Below are positions 3,132-31,985 of a DNA stretch of 36,820 nucleotides, in pieces (position 1 is the first letter of the stretch; every line of letters starts with the position of its first letter). The translations under genes and the position numbers were made by a program. The notes below the pieces were generated by a model. That model was not told the origin of the DNA. It searched no databases and saw nothing but the letters and a program-made list of their open reading frames with translations. Source of the stretch: Octopus sinensis (lineage: Eukaryota); contig NW_021829879.1 of NCBI RefSeq assembly GCF_006345805.1, forward strand, positions 1-36,820, written 5' to 3'.

Positions 3132-3462
3132 TGGCACTACGGCTGTTACGACGACGTGGTTTCCAGCCTGCTCATGAAATTAACGTGCAAGTGGCTGAGC
3201 ACTCCCCATACACGGAGAGATTCAGCATTAGTGTGACAAGGCTGGCCCTTTGAAATACAGATACAACAGAAGCATGAAGAAAAAGTGAGAGAAAGTTGTG
3301 GTGAAAGAGTACAGCAGGGTTCACCACCACTCCCTGCCGGAGTCTCGTGGAACTTTAGGTGTTTTCGCTCAATAAACACTCACAATGCCCGCTTTGGGAA
3401 CCAAAACCGCGAACCTACGTCCGCCAGTTCTCTGCCCTAACCACTGGGCCATTGCGCCTCCA
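3132..3462 (-). mobile_element. tRNA-derived SINE (octopus OR-like family), internally deleted copy
   Basis: Minus strand begins TGGAGGCGCAATGGCCCAGTGGTTAGGGC (A-box) with a degenerate B-box. Colinear with the 3478-3843 copy and shares its 3' tail with 10325-10643. Confidence 0.85.
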
Positions 3463-3477
3463 TATATATATATATCG

Positions 3478-3843
3478 TGGCACACCGTCAGTTACGACGT
3501 TGATCCGATCCACGGGACAGCCTGCTAGTGAAATTAGCGTGCAAGTGGCTGAGCACTCCACAGACACGTGTACCCTTAACATAGTTCCTGGGGAGATTCA
3601 GTGTCACACAGGGTGTGACAAGGCTGGCCCTTTGAAATACAGGTATAACAGAAACAGAAGAAAGAGTGAGAGAAAGTTGTGGTGAAAGAGTACAGCAGGG
3701 TTTGCCACCAACCCCTGCCGGAGCCTCGTGGAGCTTTAGGTGTTTTCGCTCAATAAATACTCACAACGCCCGGATTGGGAGCCGAAACCGCGATCCTACG
3801 ATCGCTAGTCCGCTGCCCTATCCACTGGACCATTGCGCCTCCA
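3478..3843 (-). mobile_element. tRNA-derived SINE (octopus OR-like family), near full length
   Basis: Minus-strand head TGGAGGCGCAATGGTCCAGTGGATAGGGC...GGTTTCGGCTCCC; tail ...CGTCGTAACTGACGGTGTGCCA. Confidence 0.88.
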
Positions 3844-4938: not shown

Positions 4939-5928
4939 CAGTACCGTGCAAAAGACTTCAGCCACTTTTGTAAATTTCTATTGTAAATTTCTACTAATTG
5001 CCAACTTATTCATGTTTCGCATGCGTTTTTTACAGATGAAATATGGGTCTTAATCATTATATTTTGAAGTAGGGGTTTTTATAAGCGATAATTTGTCAGA
5101 AGGCCTCCAGGAAAGCGAAACGAACCACGTTGCACGACGAAAATAGTGAAGGTTTGGGGGTAAGAGCCTGATGATTTGGAGATACATAAAAAGTGATAGT
5201 TCAAGAAAGTTAGTTAAAATTAACGGTAACTTGAATTGTGCCAAATACATCCAGTTGCTGAAGAACAATTTGATATCAGACTTGGATGAAGGTGAGATTT
5301 TTCAGCATGACGGAGTTCTACGCCACAAATCGAGTGCAACACAACAGAGTCTGGCTGATGAAGGTTTTACCGTATTGAAAGATTGGCCAGCTCAGAGCCA
5401 TGACTTAAATATCATCGAGTAAATATGAACAGAACTAAAGAGAAGAGTTCACCAGAAGAATCCACGCAATCTTGAAGACTTGTGTGAGCTCAGCCTCAGA
5501 GAATGGCATGTCATACGTGTGAAGATGGTGAAGGATTTGTATGCATCTCTTCCCGGGAGCATTGAAGCAATTATTCAAGCTAAGGGAAGTCACACGAAAT
5601 ATTAACAATGCACAGTAACTTCTTGAAATGAACATTATGTAATAAATTTTCATTATAGACATTTCTCTGTTTTAAAACACTGTATCTTGATTGGTTTATG
5701 TAAGGTGGCTGAGGACTTTTACACGGCCATTTTTGGTGGTCGTCTTGCGTCTTCCCCTCTCATTCAGAACCCCTACTTCAAAATATCATGGTTTGGTATG
5801 GAAATGACTCCAACATGGCCAATGTTTCATCTGTAAAAAAACCGCAATGCGAAACATCCACTTATAAGTTGGCAATTAGTAGAAATTTACAATAGTTTAA
5901 GATTGCCGAAGACTTTTGTAAGAGACTG
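4939..5928 (+). mobile_element. Internally deleted Tc1-family DNA transposon, 990 bp
   Basis: ~100-bp imperfect TIRs (4939-5041 / 5825-5928) starting CAGT and ending ACTG; TA duplication at 4937-4938 and 5929-5930; transposase remnant inside. Confidence 0.93.
5095..5605 (+). pseudogene. Tc1 transposase catalytic-domain remnant (frameshift and in-frame stop)
   Basis: VRRPPGKRNEPRCTTKIVK/(fs)FGGKSLMIW...IFQHDG...DWPAQSHDLNIIE*IWTELKRRV...IEAIIQAKGSHTKY*. These are classic Tc1 motifs; the N-terminal DNA-binding domain and first Asp are missing. Confidence 0.93.
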
Positions 5929-7715: not shown

Positions 7716-8170
7716 TGGGTTCAATATAATAGACGTAATCCATTTGTCTATTCCTTGTTTGTCCCCTCTGTGTGTAGCCCCTTGTGGGCAGTAAAGAAAT
7801 AGGTATTTCGTCTGTCTTTACGTTCTGAGTTCAAATTCCGCCGAGGTCGACTTTGCCTTTCATCCTTTCGGGGACGATTAAATACGTACCAGTTACGCAC
7901 TAGGATCGATATAATCGACTTAATCCGTTTGTCTATTCCTTGTCTATCCCCTCTGTGTTTAGCCCCTTGTAGGTAGTAAAGAAGTAGGTATTTTGTCTGC
8001 TGCTACGTTCTGAGTTCAAATTCCGCCGAGGTCGACTTTGCCTTTCATCCTTTCGGGGTCGATTAAATAAGTACTAGTTACGCATTGGGATCGATATAAT
8101 CGACTTAATCCGTTTGTGTGTCCTTGTCTGTCCCTCTATGTTTAGCCCCTTGTGGGCAATAAACAAATAA
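7716..8170 (+). repeat. SINE-derived tandem array, 185-bp unit, ~2.4 copies
   Basis: AATCC at 7737, 7922 and 8107. The unit is SINE body plus tail a, rejoined at AAAGAAATAG|GTATTTCG. Confidence 0.9.
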
Positions 8171-10324: not shown

Positions 10325-10643
10325 GTGAGGGCGCGTGGCTTAGTGGTTAGGGCATTCGGCTCATGATCGTAAGGTTGTGAGTTCGATTCCCGGCGACGCG
10401 TTGTGTCCTTGAGCAAGACACTTTATTTCACGTTGCTCCAGTCCACTCAGCTGGCAAAAATGAGTTGTACTTGTATTTCAAAGGGTCAGCCTTGTCACTC
10501 TCTGTGTCAGGCTGATTATCCCCGAGAACTACGTTAAGGGTACACGTGTCTGTGGAATGCTCAGCCATTTGCACGTTAATTTCACGAGCAGGCTGTTCCG
10601 TTGATCGTATCAGCTGGGACCCTCGTCGTCGTAACCGGCGGAG
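10325..10643 (+). mobile_element. Full-length tRNA-derived SINE, chimeric module order
   Basis: GTGAGGGCGCGTGGCTTAGTGGTTAGG (A-box), GAGTTCGATTCCC (B-box), TTGAGCAAGACACT core, then the same tail as 3478-3843. Confidence 0.9.
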
Positions 10644-10999
10644 AAGAAATGATATATACACAAAAATACATACATACACACACATGCATACATACATACA
10701 CATACATACATATATATACACATACATAAATTCACACACATACATACATACATACATGCACACATACATATACATATATACACACACAAACATACACACA
10801 CATACATAGATACACACATGCACACGCATACATGCATACACGCATATACATACAGACATACATACACACACACACACACACATACATATTGATGTTTTTT
10901 TATTATGTTGGAGTGGTTTGTTGTTTCTTCCGTGGATTATAATTTCATTCATTATTTTCGTTCGTTATTTATTCGTTTCCTCTTCTTCAGCTTGTTCTT

Positions 11000-11239
11000 C
11001 GCTATCATCCACCATCACCGCCGCCACCACCACCATCATTATCAAAATCATCATCGTCATCATCATCGTCATCATCTTCATCATCATCAACATCCTCATC
11101 ATCGTCATTCTCATCCTTATTCTCTCCCCTCCTCTTCTTCATCATCATCATCGTCATCATCATCATCGTCGTCATCACCATCGTCGTCATCATTATCATC
11201 ATCATCATCATCATTATCATCATCATGAGCGTCATCATC

Positions 11240-11296
<57 letters not shown>

Positions 11297-11480
11297 GTCA
11301 TTCTCATCCTTATTCTCTCCCCTCCTCTTCATTCATCATCATCATCGTCAACATCATCGTCGTCATCATCGTCGTCGTCATCATTATCATTATCATCATC
11401 ATCATTATCATCATCATCAGCGTCATCATCATCATCATCATCACCACCACCACAACCATCCTCAGCATCATGAGCGTCGT
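11000..11480. repeat. (CAT)n/(CGT)n trinucleotide block with a duplicated internal segment
   Basis: CGTCATTCTCATCCTTATTCTCTCCCCTCCTCTTC occurs near 11103 and near 11296. Confidence 0.9.
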
Positions 11481-15049: not shown

Positions 15050-15445
<396 letters not shown>

Positions 15446-18938: not shown

Positions 18939-19011
<73 letters not shown>

Positions 19012-19013
<2 letters not shown>

Positions 19014-19557
19014 CCCTGATGCAGTACCAAGCAGTGACTCTCGTGTCTTCTTATCTTAACTGATTGGAGGTGTTATCATGTACATCGTTTTGTCTTGGTA
19101 TAAAACATGGACGACAACAAATATTCTGCTCAGCACCACAGATTTGTGTGTCAGTTGCTTGACCTTAACCAGTTGACCATGTCCCTAAGTGGCTGACGAT
19201 ATGTGCATCTCTGATCACGAACAGAAATAGTGGGGGAGTATCATAGCCATGTGTTGTGAGGAATTCTTTGGCGTTTGGATAATTCACCTTCGGAAACATG
19301 GGTGTTTCGTTGAACATCCTTAAACAACCCTTATTCAGGGATGGGCTACTCAACCAGAAGAAAATTCCAATTGAGCTTCACCTGCAAAGCCATGCGCTGT
19401 TAATCTTGATATGAGATGAGACCACCATGTCACGCATATATGGTTGTGATGCATGTGCCTGGTGTGCCCTTATCAGACAGGTAGTCACGATGGGTATACT
19501 GGGCTTTGTATATTTTACGCCAGTATCACTTTGATGGCATGCACTGCTCTCTCACTC
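19012..19557. mobile_element. Unclassified ~546-bp non-coding element flanked on both sides by (AAT)n
   Basis: (AAT)n at 18904-19011 and 19558-19653; a second partial copy lies in inverted orientation at 29488-29830. Confidence 0.75.
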
Positions 19558-19729: not shown

Positions 19730-20281
19730 AGATAAACGGATTAAGTCAATTATATCGACCCCAGTGCGTAACTGTTACTTATTTAATCGACCCCGAAAGA
19801 AGGAAAAAGCAAAGCCTACCTCGACGGAATTTGAACTCAGAACGTATCGGCAGACGAAATACCTATTTCTTTACTACCCACAAGGGGCTAAACATAGAGG
19901 GGACAAACAAGGACAGACAAACGGATTAAGTCAATTACATCGACTCCAGTGCTTGACTGGTACTTAATTTATCGACCCCGAAAGGAACAAAGGCAAAGTC
20001 GACCCCGGGGGAATTTGAACTCAGAACGTAGCGGCAGACGAAATACCTATTTCTTTACTACCCACAAGGGGCTAAACATAGAGGGGACAAACAAGGACAG
20101 ACAAACGGATTAAGTCAATTACATCGACTCCAGTGCTTGACTGGTACTTAATTTATCGAACCCGAAAGGATGACAGGCAAAGAAAACCTCGGCGGAATTT
20201 GAACTCAGAACGTAACGGCATACGAAATACCGCTGAGCATTTTGCCCGGCGTGCTAACGTTTCTGCCAGCTCGCCGCCTTT
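19730..20281 (-). mobile_element. SINE trimer (AAGGCGGCGAG family), 184-bp unit
   Basis: Head at 20281 on the minus strand; junction GAAATACCTATTTC at 19856 and 20040; the two downstream tail-a blocks look essentially identical. Confidence 0.92.
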
Positions 20282-26010: not shown

Positions 26011-26170
26011 GACAGCAGCAGGCAGTTTAGTGGAATGAGAACAGAATGACGACAGTCATTTGCTGCACATGTGTACTTCTTACACTTTAAAGGCGTTAAT
26101 AATTGTATTTGGTTGTTGCTATCTGTTCGGGCTTACGAATCGGTGTTATAATCATGTTGTGTAAACATTC

Positions 26171-26299
26171 TGTTGTGTGGACGCCCCCAGCCGATGAAAT
26201 AGTCTAGCCCAATACGTAGATGTATAGGGAGAAGTCTAGACGTCGACAGAGGTCAGAATCGAGTTGAGTGTAGAAGGCATCCGAACGAGCGACATAACA
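26171..26299 (+). repeat. 5' LTR of the TRIM
   Basis: TG...CA termini; differs from the 3' LTR by about 9 substitutions and two 2-nt indels (hand count). Confidence 0.95.
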
Positions 26300-26300
26300 G

Positions 26301-26349
26301 TGGCGACGAGGACGAGATTCGAACTCACGCGGGAATATCTCAATGGGTT
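26301..26349 (+). promoter_or_regulatory. Extended primer-binding site: antisense of the 3' 49 nt of mature tRNA-Ser(GCU)
   Basis: Reverse complement AACCCATTGAGATATTCCCGCGTGAGTTCGAATCTCGTCCTCGTCGCCA: CCA end, G73 discriminator, T-loop TTCGAAT, long variable arm. Colinear with recalled metazoan tRNA-Ser(GCT). Confidence 0.85.
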
Positions 26350-26549
26350 TATGGTATGATTTGTTCCAGGTCCCAGAACCGCAAGCAAAAGTGTTCGAGG
26401 ACCCAGAACCACAAGCAAAAGCAGAACCGACATGTAGGTCGAACAGGAAGAGAAAACCTACAGAAATGATGGAAATTAACGCTAAGAGAAAAGGATATGC
26501 CAGTTTCTCACTGAGGAAATAAAATTGATAAATTCGGGTTTAAAAACTC

Positions 26550-26561
26550 AAAAAGGGGAGG
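26550..26561 (+). promoter_or_regulatory. Polypurine tract of the TRIM
   Basis: AAAAAGGGGAGG immediately before TGTTGTG of the 3' LTR. Confidence 0.92.
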
Positions 26562-26690
26562 TGTTGTGTGGACGTCCCCAGACGATGAAATAAGCTAGCC
26601 CAATACGTAGATATATATTGGGAGAAGTCTAGACGTCGACAGAGGTCAGGGTCGAGTTGAGTAGAAGGCATCCGAACGTGCAACATAACA
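26562..26690 (+). repeat. 3' LTR of the TRIM
   Basis: Direct repeat of 26171-26299. Confidence 0.95.
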
Positions 26691-26767
26691 CATTCAAACA
26701 TCGTCGCTATCTTCGCAACTGCAGCCGCTTTGCATCATTGCGATCTTTGGTTTTCCAAAATCGTTCT

Positions 26768-29487: not shown

Positions 29488-29830
29488 CTCACTTAAAAGG
29501 TCCTTGAATAAGGGTTGTTTAACGATAATGAATGAAACGCCCATATTTCCACAGGTAAATTATTCAAACCCCAAAGAATTCTTCTCAACAGATAGCTATC
29601 ATGATCCTCCGCTACTTCTGCTCATGATCAGAGATGCACATATCGTCAGCCACTAAGGGACATGGTCAACTGATTAAGGTCAAACAACTGACAAGCAAAT
29701 CTGTGTTATTGAGCAAAATATATACTGTAGCCCATCTTTTTTACCAAGACAAAACAATGTACATGATAACACTTCCAATCAGTTAAGATCAGAAGCCACG
29801 ATAGCCACTGTCTGGTACTGCATCAAGGCA
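29488..29830. mobile_element. Partial inverted copy of the 19012-19557 element
   Basis: GAATAAGGGTTGTTTAA...CAGAGATGCACATATCGTCAGCCACT...GGTACTGCATCA.GGCA is the reverse complement of 19012-19340. Confidence 0.88.
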
Positions 29831-29851
29831 TCTTTGTTATTGTTATTATTT

Positions 29852-30354: not shown

Positions 30355-30955
30355 TTATTACCATTTTCATATACACACAATAGATTAGACTGTTGGAAAA
30401 CAAAAATTCCTATCATCGGGCTTCAATAAGTAACCTGAGGTGCCAAGAACCCTCCAAAATATCCTAGCTGACCCGAATAACACAGTTCTCTGGAGCTGTA
30501 GTAGACTAGGTTTTACGCCTATTTCCTCAATCCATCTGTTCAAATCTTTAAGGGTTATGCACCTATAACTACTGGGATACATTTTACCTGCACTTTCCAT
30601 AATCTCTGTAATTCAATGGCTAGGTCTTGGTACTTTGCTATTTTTCTATACCTCTCATATTGATATTTTCCTCATTTGGATCTGTAAAGTCAATTGTCTG
30701 ATATTTTCTACTCTCTGTCTATTGCTACTATACCAGGCATTCTACCTTCTATTCCTTTGTCAGTCTAAATGTCAAAGTCCCACAACATCTTATATTTCTT
30801 ACTTTCTAGCACTTTCCTAAATCCATGTTCATACCATTTATCAGTATGGTCAAATCCTAGCTTTCTAAATAGCTCCCAGTGGATTACTCTCCCTAGGTTG
30901 TCATGTCTTTTCTTGTATTCTTTCTGTGCTAGCATGCTACATTCACTTCCTATAA
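30355..30955 (-). mobile_element. R4/Dong-type LINE 3' fragment: end of zinc knuckle plus restriction-like endonuclease (pseudogenised)
   Basis: Minus strand: ECSMLAQKEYKKRHDNLGRVIHWEL...KWYEH...LWDFDI*TD...RMPGIV...KYQDLAIELQRLWKV...IPVVIGA...LQRTVLFGSARIFWRVL, with stops and frameshifts. Confidence 0.9.
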
Positions 30956-31057
30956 ATCCTTAAATCCTTAAAAATGTTTTAGCCCGAAGGCCGCGGCCAT
31001 GCTGGGGCACCACCGCTACATGAGTAATCTCTACATTCACTTACTACGTGTGTAACA

Positions 31058-31430
31058 TTATCATTATATGAAAACTCTTCGCTTTATTTTGCTGAGTATG
31101 ATGGAAAGTGTCAGCTGTCCACAGCCAGCAGACCAAGGTGACACTTGTTTACTGGTCATGCTTCAAGAACTCTGCGAAGAATTCTTGCAGTTCCAGGCAA
31201 TACTGATTTTTGTAGGTGCTCTACCTTCACACTTGTACCAACCTTTTTCATCCATGTTGGTAGTTGAGTGCAGATACTTCCAAGTACACCAATCAAGATT
31301 GGTATCACGTCTGCTCTCTTCATTGACCACAACCTTCGTATTTCCCACTTTAAATCGTCAGAGCTGTTTATTTTTTCTTCTTGCACATTGATCCTGTTGT
31401 CACTGGGGCATGCTACGTCGATTATCATGC
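31058..31430 (-). mobile_element. R4/Dong-type LINE 3' fragment with an intact 90-aa RLE C-terminus
   Basis: ORF 31156-31428: IIDVACPSDNRI...DLKWEIRRLWSMKRADVIPILIGVLGSI...LQKSVLPGTARILRRVLEA; 3' UTR ends in degenerate TAA repeats. Confidence 0.9.
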
Positions 31431-31445
31431 ATTCTTCTTTTTCTT

Positions 31446-31535
<90 letters not shown>

Positions 31536-31619
31536 GTTATTATTATTATTATTTTTATTATTATTATTGTTATCAACATCATCATCATCATCATTGTCAC
31601 CATCCTCCTCATCCTCATC

Positions 31620-31678
<59 letters not shown>

Positions 31679-31751
31679 CATTATTATTATTATTATCATC
31701 ATCATCATCATCATTATCATCATCATCATCATCATCATCATCCTCATTATG

Positions 31752-31801
<50 letters not shown>

Positions 31802-31811
31802 CATTATTATT
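31431..31811. repeat. (TTC)n then (TTA)n/(TCA)n microsatellite
   Basis: Direct reading. Confidence 0.97.
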
Positions 31812-31985
31812 AAGGCGGTGAGCTGGCAGAATCGTTAGAGCCATTTCCCCCCTCATTTCGTTCTGAGTTCAAATATCGCTGAAGTCAACTTTACCTTTCA
31901 TCCTTTTGGGGATAAAATACGTACTAGTAGCGTACTAGAGTCAATGTAATCGACTTAACCACTCTCCCAAAATTCGAAACCATTA
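31812..31985 (+). mobile_element. SINE monomer (AAGGCGGCGAG family), internally deleted
   Basis: AAGGCGGTGAGCTGGCAGAATCGTTAG head directly after (TTA)n; TTCTGAGTTCAAAT; CCTTTCATCCTTTTGGGG. Confidence 0.85.

What the first reader, a model, noticed from the sequence alone, without database searches (positions are those of the whole stretch)
26171..26690. Complete 520-bp TRIM in an octopus-like genome
Seen: every cis element of an LTR retrotransposon (129-bp LTRs with TG...CA ends, 5-bp TSD, PBS, PPT) around only 262 bp of internal sequence; LTRs roughly 90% identical, so not recent; no AATAAA in the LTR. Known: TRIMs are well described in plants and sporadically in animals. Inference: a non-autonomous Gypsy-dependent family that may be undescribed in cephalopods.
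Basis: partly seen in the sequence, partly recalled or inferred. Interest (0 to 1): 0.75.

Follow-up and report, generated by a model that had tools for sequence, protein, structure and literature searches.

The report
Miniature LTR retroelement with a 49-nt tRNA-Ser primer site
A 520-bp stretch has every structural mark of a tiny non-coding LTR retrotransposon (a TRIM-type element), including an unusually long primer site that copies the last 49 bases of tRNA-Ser. Whether it belongs to a multi-copy family could not be tested, so it remains an ordinary, old mobile-element insertion with one curious detail.

Summary
Two 129-nt direct repeats lie at 26171-26299 and 26562-26690. They are 90% identical, with 9 substitutions and two 2-nt indels. 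They have TG...CA ends, a perfect 5-bp duplication (CATTC), a 262-nt interior, a primer-binding site (PBS) 1 nt after the 5' LTR and a 12-nt polypurine tract touching the 3' LTR. No open reading frame in it matches any protein family.

The new result concerns the PBS. It is not 18 nt: window 26301-26349 is an ungapped complement of the last 49 nt of tRNA-Ser(GCU). It covers CCA, the acceptor strand, the T arm, the 14-nt variable arm and the 3' anticodon stem. Its stem differences keep base pairing. Similarity stops at anticodon-loop position 37.

By structure the element meets every testable TRIM criterion. It lacks the marks of Helenus, Cassandra/Ajax, retrozymes and biv-TRIM.

The two claims that would make it interesting could not be tested: a multi-copy family mobilised as a unit, and a Gypsy partner. 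A control showed that the available collections do not contain this genome's repeats. The literature held here describes no cephalopod TRIM.

Verdict: a real, old (about 10 My on an octopus clock), non-autonomous LTR element. It is probably a TRIM and possibly a one-off deletion derivative. Interest is modest.

The parts
26166..26170 (+). 5' copy of the target-site duplication, CATTC
   Evidence: Read directly. It is identical to 26691-26695, and the sequences further out are unrelated.
26171..26299 (+). 5' LTR, 129 nt, TGTTGTG...CATAACA
   Evidence: 90% identical to 26562-26690; 9 substitutions plus two 2-nt indels; no AATAAA or ATTAAA.
26209..26227 (+). Putative promoter motifs in U3: CCAAT (26209-26213) and a TATA-like GTATAG (26222-26227). 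The same motifs lie at 26600 and 26612 (TATATA) in the 3' LTR.
   Evidence: Motif scan. This is inference only; no transcript data were available.
26300..26561 (+). Interior, 262 nt, non-coding
   Evidence: One search gives the length; the longest ORFs are 59 to 65 aa; no Pfam family; no homologue.
26301..26318 (+). Canonical 18-nt primer-binding site, TGGCGACGAGGACGAGAT, complementary to the 3' end of tRNA-Ser(GCU) including CCA
   Evidence: It matches the complement of human tRNA-Ser-GCT-1-1 at 15/18. It matches the published tRNA-Ser(GCT) primer TGGCGACGAGGATGGGAT at 16/18, and the two differences from that primer lie in T-stem positions that still pair. The first 11 nt equal the primer site of bivalve Helenus-3 and Helenus-6_PiIm.
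26301..26349 (+). Whole tRNA-derived block: complement of tRNA-Ser(GCU) positions 37 to 76 plus CCA. It holds CCA, the discriminator G, acceptor strand CCTCGTC, T arm GTGAG-TTCGAAT-CTCGT, a 14-nt variable arm and anticodon-stem strand CCCAT.
   Evidence: Ungapped identity to human tRNA-Ser-GCT is 39/49, against 9/36 for the rest of the tRNA. Differences in the T stem (52:62 G-C to A-U) and the variable stem (C-G to A-U) are compensatory.
26362..26421 (+). 30-bp tandem duplication inside the interior (two copies, 90% identical)
   Evidence: D6; Tandem Repeats Finder: period 30, 2.0 copies.
26550..26561 (+). Polypurine tract AAAAAGGGGAGG, directly abutting the 3' LTR
   Evidence: purine run. One search shows its position.
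26562..26690 (+). 3' LTR, 129 nt
26691..26695 (+). 3' copy of the target-site duplication, CATTC

Best explanation
This is one old copy of a non-autonomous miniature LTR retrotransposon of the TRIM kind.

Shown:
- It has the complete cis apparatus of LTR retrotransposition: LTRs with TG...CA ends, a PBS, a PPT and a 5-bp duplication made by an integrase.
- It encodes no recognisable protein.
- Its primer is tRNA-Ser(GCU).

Inferred:
- Its RNA was packaged, reverse-transcribed and integrated by proteins supplied in trans by an autonomous LTR element. On priors that partner is Ty3/gypsy.
- The insertion is roughly 10 My old if an octopus clock applies.
[quoted passage not shown] Synthesis then halted at the bulky modified base at position 37. 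This happened either in an ancestor of the family or in the cycle that made this copy.
For: Anatomy.

No coding capacity.

Primer identity and extent:
- Searches used printed sequences: human tRNA-Ser-GCT-1-1 from PMC10359600 and a tRNA-Ser(GCT) primer from PMC9072684.
- Identity is 39/49, ungapped and anchored at CCA. The variable arm has the same length. The stem changes are compensatory. Similarity falls sharply to 9/36 beyond position 37.
- The other Ser isoacceptors and tRNA-His match only the generic T loop or variable part.

Read-through precedent: PMC13191261 states that plus-strand strong-stop DNA normally ends after 18 nt at m1A58. It lists a minor HIV-1 product that ends at ms2t6A37, and it reports read-through of A58 when the m1A58 methyltransferase is mutated.

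Size class: 129-nt LTRs, a 262-nt interior and a 520-nt total fit the TRIM definition given in PMC10886601.

Age: K2P is 0.075. PMC13282606 equates a Jukes-Cantor distance of 0.09 with 25 My, about 3.6e-9 per site per year. That gives about 10 My.
Against: - Only one copy was seen, and no second copy, solo LTR or partner could be searched for. The defining property of a TRIM family, repeated mobilisation of the short unit, is therefore unproven.
- The LTRs have no canonical poly(A) signal.
- The leader RNA is no more structured than its shuffles (z = 0).
- That position 37 of tRNA-Ser(GCU) carries t6A is general tRNA knowledge, not something tested for this host.
- PMC13191261 treats the position-37 product as unable to complete strand transfer in HIV-1.
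- The boundary at position 37 is defined against a human tRNA. With about 4% decay per copy it is uncertain by a few bases.
Confidence: 0.6

Rival explanations
1. It is a one-off derivative: an ordinary autonomous LTR retrotransposon (Gypsy or Copia) inserted here and later lost nearly all of gag-pol by an internal deletion. Only the primer-site-proximal leader and the PPT-proximal tail remain. The short interior was never mobilised.
For: Only one copy is visible. The matching duplication and the LTR pair would survive such a deletion. The element is old enough (K2P 0.075) to have decayed. The 59-aa ORF at 26343-26522 starts just after the tRNA block, where gag would start.
Against: No trace of gag, pol or integrase remains in any frame, and no protein homologue was found. 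A 129-nt LTR is short for an autonomous Gypsy element, though GalEa Copia elements reach 133 nt. The usual fate of an old LTR element is a solo LTR, not a clean loss of about 95% of the interior that spares both the primer site and the PPT (general knowledge).
Confidence: 0.27
2. The 49-nt primer site is a selected, family-wide feature rather than a replication accident. Extra pairing with the T arm and variable arm helps a protein-less element compete for the partner's reverse transcriptase. Alternatively, the primer is a 3' tRNA half cut in the anticodon loop, and plus-strand synthesis simply runs off its 5' end at position 37.
For: The block ends in the anticodon loop, where tRNA halves are cut (the cleavage site is general knowledge). 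Ty1 uses pairing with tRNA segments beyond its 10-nt primer site (PMC3592414). The fungal Helenus families use anticodon-loop primer sites (PMC10886601).
Against: There is one copy only, so conservation cannot be judged. Bivalve TRIMs that use the same tRNA-Ser(GCU) have only 11 complementary bases. No second, Ty3-style complementary segment was found in the interior.
Confidence: 0.25
3. It is not a retroelement at all. It is a partial tandem duplication (1.33 copies of a 391-bp unit) that happens to resemble LTR-interior-LTR.
For: The start-to-start spacing of the repeat is 391 to 393 bp, and there are only 1.33 units.
Against: A duplication does not explain these features: TG...CA ends, the 5-bp duplication, a tRNA 3'-end complement that includes the post-transcriptional CCA exactly 1 nt from the repeat edge, and a PPT exactly at the other repeat edge.
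Confidence: 0.02

Closest known systems
Plant-type TRIMs (terminal-repeat retrotransposons in miniature), as summarised in PMC10886601
   Same: Total under 1 kb. LTRs of about 100 to 250 nt. A short non-coding interior bounded by a primer site and a PPT. A 5-bp duplication. Presumed mobilisation in trans by Copia or Gypsy proteins.
   Different: A family with many copies has not been shown here. The primer is tRNA-Ser(GCU), and the complement is 49 nt long instead of about 12 to 18. The host appears to be an animal.
biv-TRIM of bivalve molluscs (PMC6934838)
   Same: A molluscan host is likely. Miniature LTR-interior-LTR layout. A similar G-rich PPT (GGGGAGA against GGGGAGG).
   Different: biv-TRIM has terminal repeats of 202 to 218 nt, a 77 to 80-nt interior and no canonical primer site. 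It carries a conserved TGATCCCAAAGGAC motif that is absent here.
Helenus (TRIMp3) families, especially Helenus-3 and Helenus-6_PiIm of the pearl oyster (PMC10886601)
   Same: Animal or molluscan TRIMs. These two families share the first 11 nt of the primer site, TGGCGACGAGG, so they use the same tRNA-Ser(GCU) primer.
   Different: Helenus LTRs contain a tRNA-like Pol III promoter, and animal Helenus makes 4-bp duplications. Here the LTR has no tRNA-like sequence, the duplication is 5 bp, and there is no similarity beyond the 11-mer.
Plus-strand strong-stop read-through products of retroviral reverse transcription (product P5 in PMC13191261)
   Same: A copy of the tRNA primer that passes position 58 and ends at the modified base 37. 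This is exactly the extent of the tRNA-derived block here.
   Different: P5 is an in vitro or minor HIV-1 product regarded as a dead end. Here the equivalent sequence is fixed in an integrated element of an invertebrate-like genome.
Ty1 extended primer site (PMC3592414)
   Same: Template-tRNA pairing beyond the acceptor strand, involving the T arm.
   Different: Ty1 has a 10-nt primer site plus separate boxes. Here the complement is one uninterrupted 49-nt block.

Membership tests
TRIM | Two terminal direct repeats of roughly 100 to 250 nt with TG...CA ends | tested here: met
   129-nt LTRs, 90% identical, TGTTGTG...CATAACA.
TRIM | Total length under 1 kb with a short interior | tested here: met
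   520 nt in total and 262 nt of interior.
TRIM | Primer-binding site next to the 5' repeat | tested here: met
   A tRNA-Ser(GCU) 3'-end complement starts 1 nt after the LTR.
TRIM | Polypurine tract next to the 3' repeat | tested here: met
   AAAAAGGGGAGG at 26550-26561 abuts 26562.
TRIM | Target-site duplication | tested here: met
   CATTC on both sides.
TRIM | No gag or pol coding capacity | tested here: met
   No Pfam hit in any long frame. No homologues.
TRIM | Multiple dispersed copies with the same short interior and different duplications (mobilised as a unit) | not testable with these tools
   No eukaryotic genome collection is on hand. Scans of metagenome, viral and prokaryote collections gave zero. 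A control showed the protein collections lack this genome's repeats.
TRIM | An autonomous partner sharing LTR ends, primer site and PPT | not testable with these tools
Helenus (TRIMp3) | tRNA-derived sequence with A and B boxes inside the LTR | tested here: not met
   ARAGORN found no tRNA. Rfam found none at gathering score or at E<=10. No similarity to the Helenus LTRs tested.
Cassandra / Ajax | 5S rRNA-derived sequence inside the LTR | tested here: not met
   No 5S rRNA match in the Rfam scans.
Retrozyme | Hammerhead ribozyme in each LTR | tested here: not met
   No hammerhead match in the Rfam scans.
biv-TRIM | Terminal repeats of 202 to 218 nt, a 77 to 80-nt interior and the conserved TGATCCCAAAGGAC | tested here: not met
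   The dimensions differ. The motif is absent from the element even with 3 mismatches allowed.
Gypsy-dependent non-autonomous element | LTR, primer site or PPT similarity to a Ty3/gypsy element of the same genome | not testable with these tools
   Only priors are available: tRNA-Ser primer sites in Ty3/gypsy clades and Gypsy dominance in octopus genomes.

The most novel reading that the evidence does not exclude
This would be the first TRIM family described in a cephalopod. Its primer-binding site would be a heritable 49-nt copy of the 3' part of tRNA-Ser(GCU) ending at position 37. That would make it a genomic fossil showing that a plus-strand strong-stop product which reads through m1A58 and stops at the position-37 modification can complete integration and found a lineage. 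An alternative reading is that a 3' tRNA half served as the primer.
Probability: 0.2. Interest if true: 0.55.

Novelty: new member of a known kind. Interest (0 to 1): 0.33.

Why it matters
If a family exists, it would add cephalopods to the short list of animals with TRIMs: hymenopterans, cestodes and bivalves, plus the phyla that carry Helenus or Ajax. It would also give a marker for the activity of its autonomous partner in genomes where LTR elements are rare.

The 49-nt primer site is the more unusual point. An integrated element that carries the tRNA primer copied up to position 37 bears on how strictly tRNA modifications police plus-strand transfer. It also bears on whether 3' tRNA fragments can target or prime such elements.

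As a single decayed copy it has no evident effect on any gene in the window.

Tried and rejected
- Other copies in the window: none.
- tRNA or other RNA family in the element: none by ARAGORN or Rfam at gathering score or at E<=10. A truncated-tRNA trick recognised only the T hairpin. The weak RF01098 hit at the PPT (E = 0.21) is a purine-run resemblance.
- DNA scans of public collections with a 24-nt LTR core or a degenerate tRNA/primer-site pattern gave zero hits. These were metagenome contigs, viral contigs and prokaryote genomes.
- Protein route to other copies, via ORFs that might have been called on public contigs:
  - The 65-aa ORF found nothing, and exact look-ups found nothing.
  - The LTR-frame ORF, searched against 1.84 billion representatives, gave only P0003. 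That is a translated satellite with nine short repeats and is spurious.
- Control: a repeat ORF that occurs twice in the window also finds nothing. A LINE-tail ORF finds only two 50%-identical ORFs from one ENA metagenome, whose contigs are unrelated to the window. The negatives are therefore uninformative about copy number.
- Homology to bivalve Helenus-3 and Helenus-6: only the 11-nt primer site is shared. The biv-TRIM motif is absent.
- Leader RNA structure: z = 0. A bipartite, Ty3-like primer site: none.
- A GalEa Copia partner is disfavoured by its tRNA-Met primer site, but Copia in general is not excluded.
- Literature on a cephalopod TRIM: none found.

Full report
**Observation**

- Two 129-nt direct repeats, 26171-26299 and 26562-26690, align at 118 of 131 columns (90.1%).
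- Without the two 2-nt indels they differ at 9 of 127 sites (6 transitions, 3 transversions; K2P 0.075).
- Each starts TGTTGTG and ends CATAACA, so the ends are TG...CA with a 6/7 terminal inverted repeat.
- The five bases outside each end are CATTC (26166-26170 and 26691-26695). Further out the flanks are unrelated.
- Between the repeats lie 262 nt.
- A 12-nt purine run, AAAAAGGGGAGG (26550-26561), touches the 3' repeat.
- There is no AATAAA or ATTAAA in either repeat.
- Nothing else in the 36.8-kb window resembles the repeat or the interior, and the flanks are unique in the window.

**The primer-binding site**

One base after the 5' repeat the sequence reads TGGCGACGAGGACGAGATTCGAACTCACGCGGG. 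I compared its reverse complement with tRNA sequences printed in two papers:
- human tRNA-Ser-GCT-1-1 and other tRNAs (PMC10359600);
- a primer for tRNA-Ser(GCT), TGGCGACGAGGATGGGATTCGAACCCACGCGT (PMC9072684).

Anchored at the CCA end and without any gap, the reverse complement of 26301-26349 matches tRNA-Ser-GCT at 39 of 49 positions. The next 36 positions match at 9 of 36, which is random. The 49 nt parse as follows:
- anticodon-stem 3' strand CCCAT;
- a 14-nt variable arm, the same length as in the human tRNA;
- T arm GTGAG-TTCGAAT-CTCGT;
- acceptor strand CCTCGTC;
- discriminator G;
- CCA.

The differences from the human tRNA keep the pairing:
- T-stem pair 52:62 is A-U instead of G-C.
- Position 64 gives U-G instead of U-A.
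- The fourth pair of the variable stem is A-U instead of C-G.
- One pair of the variable stem is broken (A.C).

The other serine isoacceptors and tRNA-His share only the generic T loop or variable region, not the acceptor strand. CCA is added after transcription, so the block was copied from a mature tRNA. Its position is that of a primer-binding site. The primer is therefore tRNA-Ser(GCU), and the complement is 49 nt rather than the usual 18 or fewer.

ARAGORN and Rfam do not call it, because only the 3' part of the tRNA is present.

**Coding capacity and other RNA features**
- The longest ORFs in or across the element are 59 to 65 aa, or 111 aa from stop to stop. None matches a Pfam family.
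- A search of 5.8 billion proteins with the 65-aa ORF found nothing.
- The LTRs contain no tRNA-like, 5S-like or hammerhead sequence.
- The leader RNA folds no better than its shuffles.
- A 30-bp tandem duplication sits at 26362-26421.
- CCAAT and a TATA-like motif lie at 26209 and 26222, and again at 26600 and 26612. They may be a promoter, but this is a guess from motifs only.

**Mechanism**

Shown. The cis elements are those of LTR retrotransposition, and the 5-bp duplication is the footprint of an integrase.

Inferred. With no proteins of its own, the element must have used the particle, reverse transcriptase and integrase of an autonomous LTR element.

The extent of the tRNA block suggests how it arose. 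According to a 2026 review (PMC13191261):
- Plus-strand strong-stop DNA normally copies 18 nt of the tRNA primer and stops at m1A58.
- When A58 is unmethylated, synthesis runs on.
- A minor HIV-1 product stops at the bulky ms2t6A37.

The block here ends at position 37. From general tRNA knowledge, tRNAs that read ANN codons, including tRNA-Ser(GCU), carry t6A at that position. The simplest reading is a fixed read-through product. It could date from an ancestor of the family or from the cycle that made this copy.

Two alternatives are a selected long primer site and priming by a 3' tRNA half. The first is comparable in spirit to the extended tRNA pairing of Ty1 (PMC3592414). One copy cannot separate these readings.

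**Age**

A recent Octopus vulgaris repeat study equates a Jukes-Cantor distance of 0.09 with 25 My (PMC13282606). That is about 3.6e-9 substitutions per site per year. With K2P 0.075 between the LTRs, the insertion is about 10 My old if that clock applies. Other plausible rates give 4 to 37 My.

**Family status**

The decisive tests are copy number, a shared interior with different duplications, and an autonomous partner. All need the source genome, which no tool here holds.
- I scanned metagenome contigs twice, viral contigs twice and prokaryote genomes once, using an LTR core or a primer-site/tRNA pattern. All gave zero hits.
- I tried to reach other copies through ORFs that might have been called on public contigs, and found nothing.
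- The LTR-frame ORF matched only a translated satellite, P0003, through nine short repeats. That hit is spurious.
- As a control, an ORF from a repeat present twice in the window also found nothing.
- A LINE-tail ORF found only two 50%-identical ORFs from one ENA metagenome (ERZ25071802). Its contigs share only a 69% LINE stretch with the window.

The collections do not contain this genome, so the negatives carry no weight on copy number.

**Comparison with known elements**

The element meets all TRIM criteria that one copy can show (definition as in PMC10886601). It is not any of the following:
- Helenus, Cassandra/Ajax or a retrozyme, because the LTR lacks a tRNA-like, 5S or hammerhead sequence.
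- biv-TRIM, which has terminal repeats of 202 to 218 nt, a 77 to 80-nt interior, no primer site and a conserved motif that is absent here.

Two pearl-oyster Helenus families use the same primer, with primer site TGGCGACGAGG. They have only 11 complementary bases and no other similarity.

On the partner:
- tRNA-Ser primer sites are common in Ty3/gypsy errantivirus clades (PMC13524379).
- Octopus LTR elements found by LTRharvest were all Gypsy (PMC6238403).
- Octopus LTR elements are mostly Ty3-like in the newest annotation.
- BEL, DIRS and Ngaro elements are nearly absent from cephalopods (PMC10294476).
- GalEa Copia elements have short LTRs of 133 to 217 nt and TGTTA ends, but a tRNA-Met primer site (PMC3587641).

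Gypsy is therefore the likelier partner, but this is untested.

No paper in the searchable library describes a TRIM in a cephalopod. Repbase and Dfam could not be consulted.

**Host identity**

The window is very rich in microsatellites. It also carries a Tc1/mariner transposase fragment, LINE-tail fragments and tandem arrays of a unit with a tRNA-like T arm. It is therefore animal-like. I could not confirm that it is an octopus.

**Verdict**

This is a real, structurally complete, old, non-coding LTR retroelement.
- Most likely (0.6) it is a copy of a TRIM-type family.
- The main rival (about 0.27) is a one-off internal deletion of an autonomous element.
- The only unusual feature is the 49-nt tRNA-Ser(GCU) complement ending at position 37.
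- Novelty: a new member of a known kind. Interest: modest (0.33).

Noticed in passing
window 5150-5602 (+): Two adjacent open frames resemble the C-terminal part of a Tc1/mariner transposase. The DDE_3 match has E = 2e-4, which is below Pfam's cut-off. This is a decayed DNA-transposon fragment.
   Followed up: partly
window 30388-30612, 30768-30959, 31159-31473 (all -): Pieces of a LINE ORF2 C-terminal tail, interrupted by a (TTA)n/(TTC)n microsatellite at 31432-31812. The only protein relatives found were two 50%-identical ORFs next to RVT_1 genes on contigs of ENA metagenome ERZ25071802.
   Followed up: partly
window 7724-8169 and 19730-20231: Tandem arrays (2.4 and 2.7 copies, about 90% identical) of a 184 to 185-bp unit that contains a tRNA-like T-arm motif. 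The two arrays are in opposite orientations (inverted pair I6). This looks like a SINE-derived satellite.
   Followed up: no
window 3359-3682 (+) and 10431-10700 (-): Two copies of an unclassified interspersed repeat whose translated frames are alike (LIRSTGQPA...AEHSTDTCTLN...). It has no relative in the 5.8-billion-protein collection and was used as the control for the negative searches.
   Followed up: partly
window 18992-19341 and 29501-29850: A 350-nt inverted repeat, 85% complementary, with arms 10 kb apart. These are probably two copies of another interspersed element in opposite orientations.
   Followed up: no
window 26155-26162: The first eight bases of the LTR (TGTTGTGT) also occur in the flank, 16 nt upstream of the insertion. 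This may be chance or a hint of target preference.
   Followed up: no
window 26518-26523: The only AATAAA of the element lies in the interior, 39 to 44 nt upstream of the 3' LTR. A poly(A) signal there would cut off the 3' R region, so it is probably a chance match in A-rich sequence.
   Followed up: no
window 26519-26561: Weak Rfam match (E = 0.21, 21.8 bits against a gathering score of 70) to RF01098, a retroviral gag/pro frameshift-site model. It is driven by ACUCAAAAAGGGGAGG, which is the polypurine tract. Not significant.
   Followed up: yes
whole window: Extreme microsatellite load: 118 Tandem Repeats Finder rows. Arrays include (TAA)n of about 380 bp at 15051-15427, (CAT)n of 410 bp at 11034-11443 and many (ATAG)n, (ATAC)n and (TA)n arrays. 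GC content is 35%.
   Followed up: no
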